Shown piece after piece: positions 14,869-37,342 of a stretch of DNA of 64,000 nucleotides (positions within the stretch are counted from its first letter, which is position 1; every line of letters begins with the position of its first letter). The position numbers and the translations under genes are program-made. Under the pieces are notes generated by a model that ran no database searches, was not told where the DNA came from, and saw only the letters and a program-made list of their open reading frames with translations. The stretch is from Fimbriosthenelais zetlandica (Eukaryota): NCBI GenBank assembly GCA_977030845.1, contig OZ365112.1:16120001-16184000 (forward strand), in the 5' to 3' direction.

Positions 14869-19971
<5,103 letters not shown>

Positions 19972-27026: not shown

Positions 27027-29878
27027 ATGGCTTCAAATTCATGGCAGCACCCATCCATGAGCAGTGGTATGACGCCCATTATAATCATATATAACGTAAC
27101 TTATATAACGTTTTCAAAGACATTTTTTTATCAGTAACTATTAAATTTAGAACTACACAAATTAATTCAAATCAATTTATAAAAAGCATCATAGGCCTAC
27201 AACCTATGTAAGCCTATGCCTATAGCTTCGTAACTGCCTAAATAGACTATCTGTCCCTATGTTCCGCTGGGTGGAGCCTGTGTAACCCTAGAAGGGATCG
27301 ATCATATAGGCGAGCCTATAGCCTGCTCAATTTTTTAGTTAAAATGTATGACTTTTCTCTGTTTAATCTAGCTTCCAACTACTTGTTTGTGGGCAATTTG
27401 TGGGCAAGTGTTACCACTGATAATCTGCGCGGCCTCTTCGGAATGTATGGGACTGTACTTAATATTTGGATGAGACAGAACCCCCAAGGGTAAGGAACTT
27501 ATTTCTCTGAAACACGCTTTGCTTATTAAATACTAGCTTGTGGGCATTGAAATCATGAACTAAGATTGTTCCCTTATATTATATTAAGCTTATAACATAA
27601 AAACATGATAGCATTTATTGGTTCTCCAATTTAATGGATTTACTTTCAAATAAAATAGTATTGTGACGGTCAGTACATGTATATTAACTAAATATTTCAT
27701 TATGCATGAAATGACTTATCTCTGATTTTTTTTCTTCATCTTGGCCCACTTTCAGTCGAAATGCCTTGATCCAGTTCTCGAATAAAGAAGCGGTTGAAAA
27801 TATTCAGATTAGTAGACCCCACTATTATATGGGTCTGGAAATCTTAACAAGACGAACCTTTTGTCCGGGACATCATGTAAGTAATACTGTATCTGCAGTA
27901 ATTAACCTACCTCGCATGAATGTAAAATTGTACGAAGTAAACTTCCTTGATGTACATAATTATAATTAATTGCTACTCATTGCTCCTCGCCTGTAAGAAT
28001 AAATTTGATAATGATATAGATCTCATGTTATGCACCTTTCCTGTGCAATAATGTAATACCCCAGGGCCCTTACCTCCAATTACCAAACCACCAAAATAAT
28101 GGACTGAATAATTTTTGTTTTGAAATGTCGATAAATAAATAAATTTTAAATGGAATGATCTCAAAATGTAGCAGAATGTAAGAAATGGGGTAATGACAGA
28201 AACTGGCCTCTGCAGCAAAAGTGACTTATGTCTGTTTAGTTGTTTGGGGTGACGTATAAATGATATTGATCTCGTGTTATGTACCTTTCCTATGAGCTGA
28301 CTCCACATTAAAACAAGTTTTATGATTGCAGTTAGAGCGGGATCTAGACAATGACGGCATCAGTAACACTGTGCACATCAGTGGTTACCCTGCTGGTATC
28401 AGTCGACAGGCCCTCTATACTGACCTCTCAAAATTCGGGAACGTGACTGATTTAAGGCCAATGGCTCCCTATGGAGATTATGGTCACGCCATGGTGATGT
28501 TCTCTGACTGGGATGAAGTCGACTATTTATTCCGTAAGAAAGTATTTTCATTGGAGTTCATGTCAATCATCCCACCCATGAGGAAATCATCTTTTATAAA
28601 AATAAGAATGTGGAAATGGATTAGAAATGCGCTTACTATGATGACATTTCGTGTAAATTATATCATTATAACAAATTCAAAGGACGATTTATTTGCTGTT
28701 TGAATGTTCATCATTGGTTTTCTTTTCCAGTGTTTGATCCTTTGTACTTATGTGGCTTCCCAGTGTGGGTATCGTCTGATGTCATGGAATCATGTGATCG
28801 CTCATGTAAGTAATAGTAAACTCCTTACCCTACTCATGTTTTACATCTGATAGGCTGTGTATGTTATGCATCATATATTAAATAACCGATTGTTGTAATA
28901 CATGTGGGCTTGGTGGATACTAGTCTATCCGTGATTATAACTCATTGAGTACAATAGTATTTTCTGGTGGGAGAATTTAACTAATTTTAACATTAATATT
29001 TTTTCGTAGATGATCCCTACGCGTCGCCGCAATCGAGCCTTGCCAGCACCCGCCCTGCTAATGTCCTACACCCTGTGAACATCAACGTTTTCGCACGACC
29101 CGACCAAAATCTTGGCCGAGCAAGAAAAGCTGCCAAGAGGCTGAAGCGAGCACAGACAATGCCTGAGGTGAAGGTTCCTGTGAACCAGGATATTGACCCT
29201 GTCACAGGTCAGAGCAGGAAGAGGAAGCGAGTCCTCTCATCTAGTGCTGTGGTGTCGGAGGGGGTAAAGCGGGCCAGACTGACCACCGAGGTAAACCGAG
29301 TAACGGCAGGCAAGCGGGACGATCGAGTCCATAAAGTTATGGAATCTATTACTCTCCTCACAAATGCTGAGCAGATGATTACGGAAATGCAACAGACAAT
29401 TGAACGGCTGGAAGAGACTGGAAAGGGACAACTACTTAAATTAACTGCCCTCAAGTCGGTAAAGAGTCCGGTCAAGGCCCAGTCTTCTACTGTGGAAAAT
29501 AGCGAGGAGTCCACTGATGACCATGAAATGTGTGACTTTTGTTTTAGTGTTATCAAAAAGAGGAAAAATCCATCAACGTCTAAAGATTGCAAGACTGCTA
29601 TCACAGAGCTTCAGAATGAAATCGATGAAATAAAGGCGATGAAAAACATGGTAGAAACGAACAAGGTTGGATTGACTAATCGACTGACTGATGCTAAAAA
29701 GCTGCTCACATGTGATATGTGCAAAAAAAGGAAGATCGACTTTGTTACTATGTGTGGCCATAGTGGTTGTAACACTTGTTGTCGGAGTCATGTCATCTGC
29801 AGGAAGTGTAATGCCTCAGTCACCAGTGCCAGAACCATTTCCCTCGTAGAAAAGCTTGAAAAAGTTACCATCGTGTGA
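27027..29878 (+). CDS. Uncharacterised protein with two N-terminal RRMs, basic NLS-like segment, coiled coils and C-terminal C3HC4 RING (putative RNA-binding E3 ligase); 5 coding exons, about 449 aa
   Basis: Exons 27027-27066 (MASNSWQHPSMSS), 27372-27489 (NYLFVGNL = RNP2), 27756-27876 (GRNALIQF = RNP1; RPHYYMGLEILTRR), 28332-28533 (VHISGYP...GHAMVMF = RRM2), 29010-29878 (INVFARP; RKRKR...KRAR; coiled coils; CDMC-x10-CGHSGCNTC-x6-CRKC). Total 1350 nt, phases 1/2/0/1 consistent, GT-AG throughout, good start context GAGATGG. The ORF track shows only fragments of this gene. Confidence 0.87.
28010..28291 (+). repeat. Pair of 33-bp imperfect direct repeats in an intron of the RRM-RING gene
   Basis: AATGATATAGATCTCATGTTATGCACCTTTCCT (28010-28042) versus AATGATATTGATCTCGTGTTATGTACCTTTCCT (28259-28291); 3 mismatches. 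Confidence 0.8.
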
Positions 29879-29973
29879 TTGTGTGAACAAGATACCAAGT
29901 ATTAACCCAGAAGCGGTTACATACTAAAAATTTAAAACATGATCTTTATAAGCCTCATTATTTAGGCCATGAT

Positions 29974-30333
29974 CATATATGATTTTTCGTTCAGCTATAT
30001 TCCTTTATGCGGGAATATTTATTTTGTACGAATTTATAAGAATTCCCTTGCCCTGTGATCAAATGTTGAGGTTTTAGATTCATGCTAAGAAATTTGAACC
30101 ATCCCAAAGTTGAAAACTTAGACTCGTGTATTGATCTTTGTCATAATTCAGTGCACTTTTCATATTTGATTTTTCGTTCACCTTTATTTCTTTATTGGGG
30201 AATATTTTATTTTGTACTTGGAGTATGAATTTCTAAGTTACCCCGTCGCCTGTGATCAAATGTTGACGTTTCAGATTCATGCTAAGAATTTTGAAACCTC
30301 CCAAAGATGAAAACATAAGACTAGTGTATTGAT
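29974..30333 (+). repeat. Diverged tandem duplication (about 190-bp period) just after the RING gene stop codon
   Basis: 29974-30135 aligns with 30161-30333; shared blocks include GATTTTTCGTTCA, CCTGTGATCAAATGTTGA, AGATTCATGCTAAGAA, CCCAAAG, GTGTATTGAT. Confidence 0.87.
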
Positions 30334-32567
30334 AATGTATGTTATCTCTTCGATTAAATGTGGTTTCAGTAATTGGATCTGTGTTTTAATCATCACAGGA
30401 ATATCAAGATATTGTAATGTAAGACATACTGCGCTCAGTTACATATTGAAGTTCTAGATATTAAGGAAACCTTTAAGATTAAGAAACGAAAACAACAGAC
30501 ATCACGAGATGGAGTTTATTTCGTGAAGATGCATAATTAACTGAAGTTGACTAAATGTACATTCTCAGCACCTGAAGGATCTCGCTTTGATATCGTGTCA
30601 CTAAGCAGTACACACAATTTATAATTTACACCTTTAAATAATTTAACATCGCTGAAATGAAGATGATTAAAATTCCTGCGAGATAAAATTTAATGTCAAT
30701 GTCAGGGTATATGCATCATCCTATAATGAAGAGAAGCACAATGTTTGTGGTATTGAGCAGTACAATTTTCTAAACTGTTACCCACAGGTATCTGTAAAAT
30801 AATAAAACACAACCTAACCTTAATTCTGAGGTTATTACGAGAAATTCAAACTGTTACTATGTATAGTCCGATTGTTTCACATGAGTAAATTTATTTTATA
30901 TTAGCAAATGTATTTCTCAACCCTGAATAAAATTCTACTCATGGATATTCTAGATGAGGGATTTCTCAATAATTACTGAAATCAATGTAGCTATCCTACT
31001 TATGCTCTAAGTACTGAAATTGAGGACGATAAATCACCTTGATGTAAATTTTGATGCATCGTAGAATTTACATGCTGAAAAGGAAGCACATAAACCCGAA
31101 TTCATATTGGTGTATAATTAGACCCTCCATTGCAAAGGCGCTCACCAAAAAATTACCATCCTTTTTGAACGAACCATTAACTTTTCTGGTTGACCGGAGA
31201 TAAAGTCAAAGATTCTCCTAACCAATCAAGAATATAGATCTTGAAATATTGCTGAAAGACACTCTGTTCAAATCGGAAGTATCCATTTAAAACTTGTAAA
31301 TCATTTATCCATTAAATAATTTGAGGCTTTCCCAAAAAGATAATAACCTTAAGTAAAAAAACTATTACAGCATATTGCATATTTACATCATAAGAGAGGC
31401 ATATTCCAGAATCCAAAGAATTACGAGGAATTTAACTTCAATGCTATTGAACATACGATTACCACAACTAGTGGCTCATAAATGAATTAGTATATTCTTA
31501 GTCAAAATTGATTCTCAAACCCTAATCAGTAATCTAATCTGTCCATAGGACAGCAGGAAATTAGTGACCATATTTGCCAGGGTATAATGTGGTAGGCGTG
31601 TACTAACTCAGATGCACCTTATACCACGGCAAATACGGTACCCACACACATTCTCGTGTATCAAATTAAAAAAAGGCTGGAAAAAATAAAGTGCATTCAT
31701 TTACAACTTAGGCACACATTCATACAGGCATTCATTCACAGGTGCTAAATCAAGAAACCTCTTGAGACGGGGAAGCAAATTCATCAATGAGGCCTAACGG
31801 CATAATATATATATCCCTGTAATTGAATCTCTCCAGAGATCAGGTGTAAATGATGGGGGAGTCAACTATAATGACATACTGGGTATGGAAGGACAGGTTA
31901 CAGGGTACCTTCCCGGTACTTTCAAAGGTGGAGTATTTGGTGGGATATCCAGAAACGATGTGAGGGAAGTATGGATGAAGGCTTGCTATCACAGGGGCAG
32001 AGAGCCATGGGTCATTATCATCATGGCTTCTCGTCCTCTTCTTTGAAGATATTTTCAAAGTTCCTACTCCAAAGGAAGATAAAACAGAAGAACAAAACAG
32101 GGGTAGGTGGTAGAATCCGTGAGTGACCATGGGTTAACGGCATCATGGTTTTCTCCTCTTCACAATGAATGTAGAGATGTTGGGTATAATTAACAGTCAC
32201 AACCCATCGTACAGCTAACATCTAGTTTTCCAGTTCCATGTCACTTGATTAAAACAGAAATCGTATTCCTGGCGATAACAGTGAAGATTCATGAGCTATG
32301 TCTCTGGTCAAGTCCGTAGAAATGTGAGCGATCTTAACTTAGAGATCAATCACTTGCTATAATGGCAAACACGTAAGCACATAGGTCCATTATTTGAAGA
32401 TAGTATGACACAGTAGTCTATGGTGCAATGATGAGATGCTCAGATAAAACCTTCTCTGTGCGTGGGGAAGAAAAGACTTTATCATCTCAAACGATGGCTG
32501 AGGCCAGGAAACATGAAACCAACCCTAGACGTTGAATAAGATACCCCTCCCCAGAAACTGAATACTT

Positions 32568-35500
32568 TTAATCTCCTTCTATCACACTCATGCTTGCTTT
32601 GCAGTCCACTTTTGACCCATCGGGACTAAGGGTGACACCCATGGAGGTAAGGAGCTCGACACAATCCTTGGTACTGGAGAATACTAATTCGCTCTGGACG
32701 AAGTCAACGGCTATCATGGGGCGATATCTATAGTACACATGGAGGTAACAAAAACATGTTAATTTCATCAATTACAGCAGTTTAACATTACAATAATTAG
32801 CGGTTCGATGACAACATTAAATACTTACCAAGCACCTGAAAGGAATACTTACCAAACCATTTAATTCTACATAAATAATTATAGAGGCATAACTGTACTT
32901 AATATACACGCGAGCAATATTGACTTGGATATTATAATAAATATTAATTATCTACATGTACTGTAAGTGTAACAAAGCTGCAAGAAAATCAATATTAGGA
33001 AAAGCAAACAGAGGACATGGAAAATTATATTTTTTCTTACTACTGTTATACAAAAGACGTTAAATGAAATATGTATAATTAAATTCGTGAATAACGGTTA
33101 TTAGTTTGGGAATAGTGAGAAGTAATACAGCACCTGTAGGATTATAAAGAAGAATTAACATAAACATTTTTTGCCACCAAGCAAGGACAAATACATACGC
33201 TCTAATCATATGACCAGCGGCAGCTTTGCGTTCCCTTTCCATGAACCAGTCAAGGAGGTAGCCAGACATTTTGGGTGCTTGAGAATATAACCTGAAAAAT
33301 CTATGATAGTTGTTAAGAGCCCAAGCAGACCGTATTTTCAAAGCGTGTTGTATACAGACATCTGCCCGATCCCCGGCAGTCAGTGAAGCAATTGCAGTCA
33401 TCATATCTGGGAAGGTAATAAAGGATAAATTTGTACCAATTATTGGATATTTTTGGTTCGAAAAATGGTCGGACTATAAAGAGCATGATAGGTAAGATTA
33501 AGCAACATTGTTTTAAAAGGATACCCATTCCATTTTTGGTGAACATGTAATATAATATCCGGTAGGCCAGGAACTCTTGTTCGTGTCCTTTCATTCCCTC
33601 AGAGTAGAGCAATTTAAGGTTAGTTTGGCATTGGTTGAATTCTTCATGGTCGCCCTGCAAGTAGAAACATTGTAAAAATATTTATCAACTTAAAACCCAG
33701 TCCTAAAGAAGTAGAAATGTTCATGTCACATCTATTGAATTTGAGGTAGTATGTGGAAAGGTAAAGCTTACTTTTTCCATGGCAATTCGGGCATGAGTCT
33801 CATACACATGAACGCAAAATTCGTTCCTAATAGTTTGTACCTGAAATTAAACATTCTATTAGTTATTATAGTAGAAATATTTGTCATATCATCCCCCAAA
33901 AGAATTATACTCAGTTTAATATCTTAACTAAAATGCTGTGATCTACAAACCCAGAAAATATTAAATAATATTGGTTTTATAACGCAGTTATTTTTAGTCA
34001 ATAGTTCAGTTAAAATGGAAAAGATAGGCACTAAGGCTTTGACAATCAGACATACCGTTAAGTCCTGTCGTATAGATTTGAGTTGTTCACACGTGTAATG
34101 GTAATCTTGTTTACTCTGCCACTTGCCCTTCACCATAGTCAATGACTTCTTCAGTACATGGAGTGGTCGGACCGTGGAGGCATCAGGTGCAGAAGTTAAG
34201 CGTAGATATCCCTTCTCCATGTCCTGGCAAGTTCCCACTATTGTAAACTGACTCCAGTCAAGCTCATCTCCATCATTGTTCTAAAGGAAGACAAAAAGGC
34301 ACAAGGAAATTTACAGTATAAATCAGATATCTTACAATAGAGCCTACATGTAAAATTTGTTTCTACTCACATTCTTCATGTTGTTTATTTGAAGAGTGAA
34401 GGGCTTGGAGCGTTTTTTGCCAGACTCTAGTGTCCCTGCAAAGCGGGCTGCTCTCTTTTGTAATTTATGGTTGTCAACTTCTTCATTATAGAAGATTTCC
34501 TTCCCTCTGTAAAAAAAAAAACAGTTTAAATAAGTCGTTAATTATTATTTAATTAAGCTCAATTATTGTTAAATTCACATAACCTTCTTATTCATATAAA
34601 TAACTGAAATCTAAATTAATTTTCAAGGGGATATATTCACCATAATAGAAAACTTACCCCTGCTTTCCTTTGCCCTTTTTCCCTTTCTTCTGAGTGATAT
34701 GTTCTTGGGCCTTTCTCGGGGTGTTTTGCTGCCTAGTCTTATTTTTGCTAGAATTGATATTATTGCGGACCTTGCGAGTGCGAGAGTTATACGACCTACT
34801 ACTGCACGATGAACTGGTTTCAGAGGAACTGTCACTGTTACTGTAACGCCTTGACCGCCGGTCATGTGACCGGTAATGTGGACTGCGGGACCGGGATCTC
34901 GATCTTGACCATGAGCGAGATGAAGATCTTGACCACCGGTTTCTTCTGAAGCCGGGAGGAGACCTGGGTCTCTGGTTAAAGACAGGTCCAGTCTGAGCTG
35001 GTCTTGGTACAGGTCCCGGGGCAGAGGCTGCTGACCCATCCCAACGTGAAGAACGCTCCTTCTTGTACATACCCATCATGTTAGCTTGCTGTAACATACT
35101 TTGTTGTATTCTACTGACTGGAAGTGTGGGCTTGGAAACAGCAACTGACTGGCCTGGCAAAGGTTCAGTTGCCCAGTTGATCTTATCAGCTAGTTTATTG
35201 TTGAACACATGGGTCAGTTTGTTTTTTAGTTTGTTTTCCATTTCATCTTTCTCTGTTTGTGTGCGAGCACTAGAAAATGCTCTTTGAACATATTCCTTCA
35301 GTTCAGGTGACCATTCTTGTGCTGGGGCATCGGCAGCAGCAGCTTGGTTGGCGATGGGTGGAGGTGGGGGAGGGCTTGTCTGAGGTACATTGGCCTTGAC
35401 TGGTGACGTCTGTTCTGTTTGTTGAGGGGCTGGCATCTGTTTGTAGTTGTTGTAGGGGTTATAATTCTGGAAAGCATTTCCTTGTTGAACATTATTTCTT

Positions 35501-37342
35501 TTGGAAAGTTGGAAGCGGATTGATGAGCCAGGAGCAGCTGAAATGTGAAATCAAGAAACATTCAATGGTTTATTTGAGATATTTCAGGACTGTTGTAATA
35601 TATTTAATTAGGTTCAGGATAGTCATCTTTCTTATTCTCAAGAGACCTATAAATTTACTTGTGCATTGTGCTATTCTGAGAAGAATTTGATGAATTTTAC
35701 CTTTGGATTTGAAATTTCCCTGAGGTCCATACATTCTGTACATACTGGGAGGAGAGTTCGGTGAAACATTAGGATTGATTGGAGGACTGCCAGAGTTGTC
35801 TTTATCTCCAAGATTGTTTTCCTCTGAGTTGTCATTTCCTGGTTGGTGCGGTGGTGGCGGGGGCGGCCCACGAGGCCTGGGACCGTAAGGACCTCTAGGT
35901 CCATACATGCGAGGTGGTCCACCATATGGACCAGGAGGTCCATACATTCCCGGGCCTGGTCCGTATGGGCCTGGTGGAGGGGGTCCATTATAGTACCTGA
36001 AGTAAAACAAGACATTTCATTATATACTTTGACATGGAAACACACATTCTGTGACATAAAGTTGGAAGGACTTTAGAAAAAGAATTTAGAAACCTAAGAA
36101 ATCACCTCATAAGAGTTAAGCCATGAAATTATGACATTGTTTATATACAAACTTAGATCATCATATATAGAAATTACGATATCTATTATCTCGCTCTGTT
36201 ATCATTAATGGGATAATATACAAGTGTCTTATCACTTACCCGTATGGGCCTGGGTACTGCTGGTTGTACATAGTATTGTACTGTTGCTGTTGGTAGTACT
36301 GCTGTTGCTGTTGATAGTTGTATTGCTGATGCTGCATTTGATGAGAACTCTGATCCGTGGCTGCTGGGGTCTCGATACTTTCCGTCGTCTTCTGCTTTTT
36401 CTGCTGTTGGACCTAGATATAGAAATCACAGATTATTACCTCATAAAAAATATCAGCATCAGGTAGCCTATAACATCGTCCCTAACATCATCAACATTAC
36501 CAGTAAATCCCTTCTCTGTGACTTTTCTTACCTGTTTTGCCTTAGCGTCTGCCTGAATAGCTTCCAAAGCTTTCTTGGCTTTTTCCCATTCTGGGGGTGG
36601 ATTAGCACCTCCTGCAGCTGGTGAACTCCCACTGAACTGTTGTGACCTATATACAAAAGACCATGGCATTAGTTGGCTTAAAAGTTAGATGCATAGACCA
36701 TAGTATAGGTGTCTGATATTGTTCCAACATGTTACATTTAATGCCATAGAATGATAGAATCTAGATAACATAGCTACTGCAATTTAATTATATAATTTAT
36801 TATAATCATATAATTTAAACACTAAAGTAAGGTTTAAACTTAAGTAAGCCCCCGCACGAATTATAGTAATATTAGCCTACATATTAAAATTATTACTTCA
36901 TAATTCATATTCAAACATTTAATAATGATTTACAATACAAATAGACTGCCCCATCCCCCATGGCCATGCCATTGCATGGGCCTACTATTTGTTTCCTAGG
37001 CAATCATTCGAAGTTGAGATTTCAAACGTGTATTACCAAAAATTACCGCAACATTACAGTTACCAGTGTACAATAAAGTGTTAAAATTTGGACCATTTTA
37101 AATCTCTATTTCTGCCATTTATTATTGGGGGGGGGGGGGGGGGACCCCCTCCCCTCCCGTGTTGAAGTTGAACCATAACAGAAAATGGCGTCACAATATC
37201 CTACATTAAGATACTGATTGAAGACAAATAAGACGTCAAATCTCTAGTATATCTCAGCCCCATAATAAATAAAACGTTCCTCTTACCATTGAGCTATTTG
37301 TGTTGCCTGATTACCAGCACTACTCCATTGTAAAGCTGCCAT
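32568..37342 (-). CDS. LENG8: Leukocyte receptor cluster member 8 homolog (SAC3/GANP-PCI domain protein, Thp3-like); 11 coding exons, about 815 aa
   Basis: Exons (minus strand): 37342-37287, 36646-36532, 36412-36240, 35996-35701, 35537-34658, 34506-34371, 34280-34056, 33840-33772, 33654-33525, 33406-33199, 32727-32568. Total 2448 nt. Motifs [112 protein letters not shown] match LENG8. Confidence 0.96.
33407..33524 (-). other. U12-type (minor spliceosome) GT-AG intron in LENG8
   Basis: 5' splice site reads G|GTATCCTTTT, the U12 consensus. The 3' end reads TTTATCCTTTATTACCTTCCCAG, with a TCCTTTAT branch-like motif about 12-19 nt from the AG and little pyrimidine tract. Confidence 0.75.
37127..37143. 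repeat. G17 homopolymer in LENG8 intron 1
   Basis: Run of 17 G followed by ACCCCCTCCCCTCCC. Confidence 0.95.

What the first reader, a model, noticed from the sequence alone, without database searches (positions are those of the whole stretch)
27027..29878. Unnamed gene: tandem RRMs fused to coiled coil and C-terminal RING, a candidate new RNA-binding E3 ubiquitin ligase
Seen: five exons splice in frame into about 449 aa. RRM1 has RNP2 LFVGNL, RNP1 RNALIQF and an hnRNP-A1/Musashi-like RPH motif. RRM2 has VHISGY and GHAMVMF, ending INVFARP. These are followed by a bipartite NLS-like RKRKR-x11-KRAR, heptad-rich helices and a C3HC4 RING (CDMC...CGHSGCNTC...CRKC). Known: the RNA-binding E3 families I recall use other layouts (MEX3 KH-KH-RING, CNOT4 RING-RRM, Roquin, Makorin and Unkempt with CCCH fingers). 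I do not recognise RRM-RRM-CC-RING as a named family. Inference: a lineage-restricted nuclear protein coupling RNA recognition to ubiquitylation. The ORF track splits it into fragments and misses RRM1's first half.
Basis: partly seen in the sequence, partly recalled or inferred. Interest (0 to 1): 0.88.

Follow-up and report, generated by a model that had tools for sequence, protein, structure and literature searches.

The report
Unnamed RRM-RRM-coiled-coil-RING gene family
This is a real, intact gene of an invertebrate animal that joins an hnRNP A1-like pair of RNA-binding domains to a coiled coil and an IAP/MIB-type RING finger; it belongs to a small, unnamed, lineage-restricted family and is probably an RNA-linked ubiquitin ligase, a known kind of protein in a new build.

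Summary
The model misses a 75-nt exon (28731-28805) that encodes the last strand of RRM2, so the protein has 470-474 aa from six exons.

An exhaustive search of 1.84 billion proteins found five related clusters, all unnamed. One relative (P0009, 488 aa) is an uninterrupted ORF on a spliced contig and aligns end to end with the window protein (E 3e-83). A third species carries two copies with the same six exons and intron phases, under purifying selection (dN/dS 0.11).

The two RRMs align together to hnRNP A1 UP1 (E 2e-13, via P0009). The tail profile hits the RINGs of MIB1, ML-IAP, cIAP and XIAP (E 8.5e-9 and weaker), and the AlphaFold2 model gives two long helices plus a RING fold.

Ligase activity and RNA binding are inferred. 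In the window copy both RNP1 motifs lack aromatic residues, the RING has no Pro after its seventh ligand, and the linchpin residue is not conserved. No RNA-seq run was listed for this genome.

Verdict: a new domain build within the known class of RNA-binding RING ligases. Moderate interest.

The parts
27027..27066 (+).
   Evidence: In frame with a GT donor. No counterpart in P0009 or L002/L003, whose start Met lies in the RRM1a exon.
27339..27489 (+). RRM1 first-half exon (RNP2 LFVGNL, helix 1, strand 2). Alternative start ATG at 27344 behind acceptor ttttttag|27339.
   Evidence: Pfam RRM_1 positions 1-33, E 2e-5. PDB Hrp1 RRM1 1.5e-5 plus about 100 other RRM chains. ATG 27344 is in frame and gives 470 aa.
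27756..27876 (+). RRM1 second-half exon: degenerate RNP1 RNALIQF, the RPHYY motif, beta4 ILTRR
   Evidence: Aligns to P0009 and to the L002/L003 exon with the same intron place and phase. Alone it hits nothing in the PDB.
28332..28533 (+). RRM2 exon, beta1 to helix 2 (VHISGY, GHAMVMF, DWDEVD)
   Evidence: Weak RRM hits: TIA-1 0.02, PABP, ZCRB1. Homologous exon in L002/L003 (E 6e-6 and 2e-6). P0009 RRM2 aligns to hnRNP A1 RRM2.
28731..28805 (+).
   Evidence: Strong acceptor and donor, in frame. Matched by FYIEGCEVIL in P0009 and by an 87-nt exon (FAFHGVPVTM) in L002/L003 at the same phase. Raises the BLASTP score against P0009 from 235 to 253 bits.
29010..29878 (+). Last exon: linker, invariant IDPxxGQ motif, bipartite NLS-like motif, two long helices, RING, stop codon
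   Evidence: Open for 298 codons. 42% identical to P0001 (E 2e-45). The acceptor place is confirmed in a relative by comparing the intron-bearing and the spliced contig.
29216..29278 (+). RKRKR-x12-KRAR, bipartite NLS-like; the block around it is the best conserved part of the tail
   Evidence: Invariant columns I61 D62 P63 G66 Q67 R71 R73 K86 R87 in alignment A3. Nuclear import itself is inferred.
29297..29461 (+). Long helix 1 of the tail (exon-5 residues 96-150)
   Evidence: AlphaFold2 with the family alignment; block pLDDT 87-96 over most of the helix.
29531..29554 (+). Conserved CxxCxSVI motif in the turn between the two helices
   Evidence: Kept in window, P0009, P0003 and L002/L003. Lies in the low-confidence segment 152-176 of the model.
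29579..29704 (+). Long helix 2 (exon-5 residues 190-231), running straight into the RING
   Evidence: AlphaFold2 block pLDDT 84-97. Aligns to the helix before MIB1 RING3 and to the RNF8 and Bre1 helix+RING.
29711..29809 (+). C3HC4 RING finger, IAP/MIB type
   Evidence: All eight ligands are kept in every family member that has this region. Family profile without BIR rows hits MIB1 RING3 8.5e-9, ML-IAP 6.8e-7, cIAP1/2 and XIAP. Predicted fold matches BIRC7 (TM 0.74, rmsd 1.6 A), Bre1, cIAP2, IDOL and XIAP.

Best explanation
Shown:
- 27339-29878 (+) holds an intact protein-coding gene of six coding exons, giving 470-474 aa.
- The product has an N-terminal pair of RRMs homologous to the hnRNP A/B-type two-RBD module (UP1-like, with the RPH motif).
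- Then comes a linker with an invariant IDPxxGQ-RKRKR...KRxRL block.
- Then two long helices with a conserved CxxC in the turn between them.
- It ends in a C3HC4 RING of the IAP/MIB1 type.
- It belongs to a small, unnamed family found so far only in a few unannotated assemblies. In another species the family is under purifying selection, and in a further species it is spliced into one mRNA.

Inferred:
- The protein enters the nucleus through the bipartite basic motif.
- It dimerises through the helix that leads into the RING, as MIB1 RING3, RNF8, Bre1 and the IAPs do.
- It recruits a ubiquitin-charged E2 through the RING.
- It is brought to its substrates by the RRM pair, which binds single-stranded RNA or an RNP partner. 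It would then work like MEX3 or CNOT4: ubiquitylation directed by RNA or RNP recognition.
- In the window copy the RRM surface is degenerate, so recognition may be weaker, non-canonical, or of protein.
For: Gene model:
- GT-AG borders and an open frame.
- Exon/intron GC contrast and a 298-codon open stretch.

One product:
- End-to-end alignment with P0009, 35% identity, E 3e-83. The N-terminal module alone gives E 1.6e-33.
- P0009's contig L001 is the spliced form of the intron-bearing contigs L006/L007. They part at a ttacag| acceptor at the same place and phase as window 29010.

Conservation:
- The same six exons and phases in L002/L003.
- dN/dS 0.11 at dS 0.11 over 550 codons between those two copies.

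RRMs:
- Pfam and PDB hits of exon 2.
- P0009 residues 3-161 align to hnRNP A1 residues 17-174, E 2e-13. The next hits are A2/B1, Hrp1, DAZAP1, Hrb27C and hnRNP D.

RING:
- Profile hits, the AlphaFold2 model and Foldseek matches.

Functional analogy:
- RNA-binding ubiquitin ligases are an established class. One example is MEX3C ubiquitylating CNOT7 on RNAs that it binds (PMC5707401).
Against: - No expression data for this species: no run was listed.
- RRM1 of the window copy has RNALIQF where P0009 has AYAYVGF and L002 has GYAFISY. Both stacking aromatics of RNP1 are lost.
- RRM2 has a degenerate RNP1 and RNP2 in all members, and Pfam does not call it.
- Pfam RING models miss most family members, and the window tail reaches only E 0.087.
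- The RING lacks the usual Pro after its seventh ligand.
- The linchpin residue after the eighth ligand is N, S, V or K, so it is not conserved. Intrinsic E3 activity may therefore be low, or depend on a partner.
- The start codon is undecided.
Confidence: 0.55

Rival explanations
1. It is a RING ligase, but the RRM pair is a protein-binding (pseudo-RRM-like) module, not an RNA reader. The ligase would be recruited to hnRNP-type or other partners by protein contacts.
For: The window copy lacks the RNP1 aromatics in both RRMs and has His at RNP2 position 2 of RRM2. RRM2 is degenerate in every member. Pfam does not detect RRM2.
Against: RRM1 of P0009 and L002/L003 keeps canonical RNP2 and RNP1 motifs, so the ancestral module probably bound RNA. 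RNP2 Phe and the last RNP1 Phe are kept in the window copy.
Confidence: 0.22
2. It is an RNA or RNP-binding nuclear protein whose RING is structural or heterodimerising only, like BARD1, MDMX or BMI1. Alone it would have no ligase activity.
For: No Pro after the seventh ligand and a non-conserved linchpin position, N/S/V/K. Weak Pfam RING scores.
Against: All eight zinc ligands and the CGH core are invariant. The closest RINGs (MIB1 RING3, ML-IAP, cIAP, XIAP, IDOL, Bre1) are active dimeric E3s. The position two after the first Cys is hydrophobic in three of four lineages.
Confidence: 0.13
3. The locus is silent or decaying in this species (an unexpressed copy), or the reader's exon-skipped 449-aa form is the main product.
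For: No transcript data here. A diverged paralogue in another species changes frame before its RING. RNP1 of the window copy is eroded.
Against: There are no stops or frameshifts over about 1.4 kb of coding sequence in six exons, all splice sites are canonical, and the RING ligands are intact. Skipping the 75-nt exon would remove beta4 of RRM2, which all relatives keep.
Confidence: 0.08

Closest known systems
hnRNP A/B-type 2xRBD proteins (hnRNP A1 UP1, A2/B1, Hrp1, DAZAP1, Musashi, Hrb27C)
   Same: Two RRMs in tandem with the same spacing. One alignment covers both domains (P0009 3-161 against A1 17-174, E 2e-13). The RPH motif after helix 2 of RRM1 is shared.
   Different: No Gly-rich low-complexity tail or M9 signal; instead a coiled coil and a RING. 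The RNP1 aromatics are lost in the window copy and in RRM2 of all members.
MIB1 RING3 and IAP-type C-terminal RINGs (ML-IAP/BIRC7, cIAP1/2, XIAP, MYLIP/IDOL)
   Same: C3HC4 RING at the very C terminus, preceded by a helix. Best profile hits 8.5e-9 to 1e-4. Predicted fold TM 0.6-0.74. The nearest natural relatives of the RING are small BIR-coiled-coil-RING proteins P0007 and P0008.
   Different: No BIR, MIB/HERC2, ZZ, ankyrin or FERM domains. No Pro after the seventh ligand, no conserved linchpin Arg, and a 10-residue longer C-terminal tail.
MEX3A-D (KH-KH-RING RNA-binding ubiquitin ligases)
   Same: The same logic: two N-terminal RNA-binding domains, a long linker and a C-terminal RING of the zf-C3HC4_3 kind. 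The MEX-3C RING is among the fold matches. RNA-guided ubiquitylation is documented for MEX3C (PMC5707401).
   Different: RRMs instead of KH domains. A coiled coil is present. No sequence homology outside the RING.
CNOT4/Not4
   Same: RING and RRM in one ligase. CNOT4-like clusters are among the nearest Atlas hits, at scores of 0.76 or less (PMC5970261).
   Different: Reversed order (RING first), one RRM plus a C3H1 finger, a C4C4-type RING, and no coiled coil.
RNF8 and Bre1/RNF20-RNF40
   Same: A long helix or coiled coil running into a C-terminal RING that dimerises. About 100 aligned columns with RNF8.
   Different: FHA (RNF8) or very long coiled coils (Bre1) at the N terminus. No RRMs.
BRAP2/IMP/Etp1
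   Same: An RRM-like domain combined with a RING and a coiled coil. This is the top Atlas feature hit, at score 0.80, which is chance level.
   Different: The order is RRM-like, RING, ZnF-UBP, coiled coil. There is no UBP finger here. No sequence match.

Membership tests
RRM superfamily (Pfam RRM_1) | Significant match to the RRM profile or to solved RRMs | tested here: met
   Exon 2: RRM_1 E 2e-5, 24.8 bits against a cut-off of 20.7; Hrp1 1.5e-5. P0009: RRM_1 1.5e-9. RRM2 is matched only through the UP1 alignment and weak PDB hits.
RRM superfamily (Pfam RRM_1) | RNP2 and RNP1 motifs with stacking aromatic residues | tested here: inconclusive
   The RNP2 of RRM1, LFVGNL, is canonical. RNP1 is RNALIQF in the window (aromatics at positions 3 and 5 replaced by N and L), but AYAYVGF and GYAFISY in relatives. 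RRM2 is degenerate in all members.
hnRNP A/B 2xRBD-Gly family | Tandem RRMs homologous to UP1 with the RPH motif | tested here: met
   One alignment spans both RRMs of hnRNP A1, E 2e-13. The window N-terminal module against that of P0009 gives E 1.6e-33.
hnRNP A/B 2xRBD-Gly family | C-terminal glycine-rich low-complexity domain | tested here: not met
   The tail is linker, helices and RING. So it is derived from this module but is not a member of the family.
RING finger, C3HC4 (IAP/MIB-type, zf-C3HC4_3) | Eight zinc ligands with RING spacing | tested here: met
   C-x2-C-x10-C-x-H-x2-C-x2-C-x6-C-x2-C in the window. All ligands are kept in P0009, L002/L003 and P0005.
RING finger, C3HC4 (IAP/MIB-type, zf-C3HC4_3) | Significant profile or fold match to solved RINGs | tested here: met
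   Family profile: MIB1 RING3 8.5e-9, ML-IAP 6.8e-7. Foldseek: BIRC7 TM 0.74. Pfam single-sequence scores are below cut-off: zf-C3HC4 E 0.087.
RING finger, C3HC4 (IAP/MIB-type, zf-C3HC4_3) | E2-binding and linchpin residues; ligase activity | tested here: inconclusive
   Hydrophobic residue two after the first Cys in three of four lineages. No Pro after the seventh ligand. Linchpin N/S/V/K. Activity needs a bench assay.
IAP (BIRC) family | At least one BIR domain | tested here: not met
   No BIR in the window exons or in P0009. BIR is found only in the distant RING relatives P0007 and P0008.
MEX3 family | Two KH domains before the RING | tested here: not met
   Pfam finds RRM_1 and no KH domain.
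CNOT4/Not4 | N-terminal RING followed by RRM and a C3H1 finger | tested here: not met
   The domain order is reversed and there is no C3H1 hit.
RNA-binding ubiquitin ligases (functional class) | An RNA-binding domain and a ligase domain in one polypeptide | tested here: met
   One ORF holds both in P0009, and the window model aligns to it end to end. That both domains are active was not testable.

The most novel reading that the evidence does not exclude
A previously undescribed family of nuclear RNA-guided RING ligases. It would have been made in one invertebrate lineage by fusing an hnRNP A1/UP1-type single-strand-binding module to the coiled-coil-RING cassette of small BIR-RING proteins. 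In this reading the conserved CxxC at the turn of the helical hairpin pairs across two chains, as in a zinc hook, to set the dimer that activates the RING. RNA or RNP binding by the RRMs would then select which nuclear RNP proteins are ubiquitylated.
Probability: 0.3. Interest if true: 0.6.

Novelty: new variant of a known kind. Interest (0 to 1): 0.45.

Why it matters
RNA-binding ubiquitin ligases link RNA recognition to protein modification, and only a handful of builds are known (KH-RING, CCCH-RING, RING-RRM). This is a further, independently assembled build: a UP1-type tandem RRM, a coiled coil and an IAP/MIB-type RING. It is kept under selection in at least three species, yet it is absent from the named entries of the protein databases searched. 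It is a clean natural example of domain shuffling that makes a new ligase. Its members also differ in whether the RNP motifs are intact, which gives a built-in comparison for asking whether RNA binding steers the ligase. It also shows that gene models in this genome can miss short exons that complete a domain.

Tried and rejected
- RNA-seq test: two run searches (whole gene, last exon) listed nothing, so read laying could not be used.
- Word-indexed protein searches found nothing useful with exon 5, with P0009, or with P0009 residues 1-175. Only the exhaustive search found relatives.
- P0004 (a 2141-aa repeat protein) and P0006 (Streptococcus MucBP) are repeat or low-complexity matches, not relatives.
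- AlphaFold2 of exon 5 without an alignment was too poor to use (pLDDT 56, RING below 50).
- The RRM half of the window protein could not be folded or scanned as one piece. It is split by introns, and I did not type long sequences. Its identity therefore rests on exon-wise hits and on the alignment to P0009.
- Exon 3 alone hits nothing in the PDB.
- MAFFT scattered the short exon fragments in alignment A1, so A1 was not used further.
- A tblastn hit suggesting another frame for the beta4 exon of L002 (LRSPSMVY...LSTNY) was rejected. The phase-compatible frame (FAFHGVPVTM) was taken instead.
- Rfam found no RNA family in the window.
- The run and assembly accessions occur in no paper.
- The organism was not identified. 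Other notes of this scan guess a mollusc or a worm; I did not test this.
- Atlas feature hits (BRAP2, CNOT4-like, giant-virus RINGs) score 0.87 or less and are leads only.
Full report
**What is in the sequence**

The window is AT-rich eukaryotic DNA with 39% GC. The named motifs are all there. The last exon is open for 298 codons, where the mean open stretch of the window is 15.7. The exons have 46% GC against 32% in the introns. This is coding sequence and not a chance pattern.

**Correction 1: a missed exon**

It has a strong acceptor (ttttcttttccag) and donor (gtaagt) and keeps the frame. It encodes LFDPLYLCGFPVWVSSDVMESCDRSY.

This is the missing beta4 strand of RRM2:
- The full-length relative P0009 has SPFYIEGCEVILSTNY at that place.
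- The genomic relatives L002/L003 have an 87-nt exon there, in the same phase, encoding FAFHGVPVTMLSEY.
- With this exon the BLASTP score against P0009 rises from 235 to 253 bits.

**Correction 2: the start**

Nothing supports exon 1 (27027-27066). P0009 starts MEFLFVGDL, with an in-frame stop in its 5' leader. L002/L003 start MEGRPSFWMFIGHL in the RRM1a exon, just behind an acceptor. The window has the same arrangement: acceptor ttttttag|27339 and ATG 27344, giving MYDFSLFNLASNYLFVGNL and 470 aa. Both starts give the same domains. Only RNA data can decide between them.

**Relatives**

The word-indexed search found nothing. An exhaustive phmmer of the last exon against 1.84 billion representatives found eight hits:
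- Five real relatives: the clusters of P0001, P0002, P0003 and P0005, plus further cluster members P0009, P0010 and P0011.
- Two BIR-coiled-coil-RING proteins that share only the helix and RING (P0007, P0008).
- Repeat proteins that are not relatives (P0004, P0006).

None of the relatives has a name or an NCBI or UniRef accession.

P0009 (488 aa) is an uninterrupted ORF on a 2105-nt Logan contig, L001. It aligns with the six-exon window protein from residue 17 to 473, at 35% identity and E 3e-83.

Contigs L006/L007 from the same or a very close species match L001 at 99.3%, but only from L001:650 onwards. Upstream of that point they read ...ctcttttacag|. So they carry an intron and L001 is the spliced form. 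The boundary falls at the same codon and phase (x-D/E-P-Y) as window 29010. In at least one species, therefore, the RRM exons and the RING exon are joined in one mRNA.

L002 and L003 are two loci on megabase contigs of another assembly. They hold the same gene with six coding exons at the same positions and phases, giving 552 aa. Between the two copies dS is 0.11 and dN is 0.012, so dN/dS is 0.11 over 550 codons. Their introns are 88-94% identical where they can be aligned. Both copies are under purifying selection.

**Domains**

RRMs:
- Exon 2 matches Pfam RRM_1 (E 2e-5, above the curated cut-off). It also matches about 100 solved RRMs, the best being Hrp1 RRM1 at 1.5e-5.
- Exon 4 gives weak RRM hits (TIA-1 at 0.02).
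- P0009 residues 3-161 align in one piece to hnRNP A1 residues 17-174, that is, to both RRMs of UP1, at E 2e-13. The next hits are A2/B1, Hrp1, DAZAP1, Hrb27C and hnRNP D.
- The N-terminal modules of the window protein and P0009 match at E 1.6e-33.

Tail:
- A family profile without any BIR protein hits only RINGs: MIB1 RING3 8.5e-9 (including the helix before it), ML-IAP 6.8e-7, cIAP1/2, XIAP, COP1, TRIM21 and Bre1.
- AlphaFold2 with the six-row family alignment gives two long helices (residues 96-150 and 190-231 of exon 5, with block pLDDT mostly 84-97) and a RING at block pLDDT 62-87.
- Foldseek matches that RING to BIRC7 (TM 0.74, rmsd 1.6 A), Bre1/RNF20, cIAP2, IDOL, XIAP, RNF8 and MEX-3C. 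In Swiss-Prot models it matches RNF8, MIB1/2, MYLIP, XIAP and RNF34.
- All eight zinc ligands are kept in every member that has this region.
- The best conserved part of the tail is not the RING. It is IDPxxGQ-RKRKR-x12-KRxRL followed by RD (invariant columns). This reads as a bipartite nuclear localisation signal, but it is conserved more strictly than such a signal needs.

**Cautions on function**

- In the window copy RNP1 of RRM1 is RNALIQF, where P0009 has AYAYVGF and L002 has GYAFISY. The two stacking aromatics are replaced by N and L.
- RRM2 has VHISGY and GHAMVMF, and it is degenerate in all members. Pfam does not call it.
- The RING has no Pro after its seventh ligand.
- The linchpin position after the eighth ligand is N, S, V or K.
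- RNA binding and ligase activity are therefore plausible, not shown. I put the full mechanism at about 0.55. By that I mean a nuclear, dimeric RING E3 steered by its RRM pair, working like MEX3 or CNOT4.

**Comparison with what is known**

RNA-binding ubiquitin ligases are an established class. At least 26 human RING-type members fall into five families by RNA-binding domain, RRM among them (PMC5707401). RING/RRM is listed as a standard E3 architecture (PMC2408969; Not4, PMC5970261).

This protein fails the defining features of MEX3 (no KH), CNOT4 (order and finger types), IAPs (no BIR) and hnRNP A/B (no Gly-rich tail). It is a new build made of known parts.

Feature search in the ESM Atlas returns only weak look-alikes that also combine an RRM-like domain and a RING. 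These include BRAP2 at 0.80, CNOT4-like clusters at 0.76, and an oomycete cluster with RRM_1 plus zf-C3HC4_3 at 0.73. That points to convergent builds elsewhere and not to relatives.

**Not achieved**

No sequencing run was listed for this genome, so the junctions are supported by homology only. The organism was not identified; other notes of this scan guess a mollusc or a worm, and I did not test that.

Noticed in passing
window 29531-29554: A CxxCxSVI motif sits in the turn between the two long helices. It is kept in four lineages (window, P0009, P0003, L002/L003) and absent in P0005. No second ligand pair is evident, so it might bind zinc across a dimer, as a zinc hook does.
   Followed up: partly
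window 29973-30317: A tandem duplication of about 190 nt lies just downstream of the stop codon, in the probable 3' UTR (29973-30120 and 30160-30317, 83-85% identical). The first poly(A)-signal-like hexamer, ATTAAA, is at 30353.
   Followed up: partly
window 33060-34238 (- strand), probably extending to about 36000: The neighbouring gene has SAC3_GANP exons (Pfam E 2.9e-5 and 0.0095). By my own recognition it is LENG8/THP3-like. A proline/glycine-rich ORF and an RS-rich ORF lie further along at 34654-36010.
   Followed up: partly
L004:328-1096 and L005 (runs ERR14368249 and ERR14368245): A diverged paralogue (50% identical to P0009) whose tail ORF changes frame before the RING. The change is identical in two runs. 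It is either a truncated RING-less form or a pseudogene. Run ERR14368249 also holds the P0010-type copy (L007).
   Followed up: partly
L002:4661-5471: A minisatellite with a period of about 56 nt lies in intron 2 of the relative's gene. Reverse-transcriptase ORFs lie in intron 1 of both L002 and L003.
   Followed up: no
P0007, P0008 (Logan contigs): Small BIR-coiled-coil-RING proteins (232 and 236 aa) whose helix plus RING is the nearest natural relative of this family's tail. They are possible donors of the cassette.
   Followed up: partly
window 17043-17417 (- strand): A 124-aa open stretch rich in Ser, Pro and Lys (…[16 protein letters not shown]…) with no Pfam hit. It is probably an exon of another gene.
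   Followed up: no
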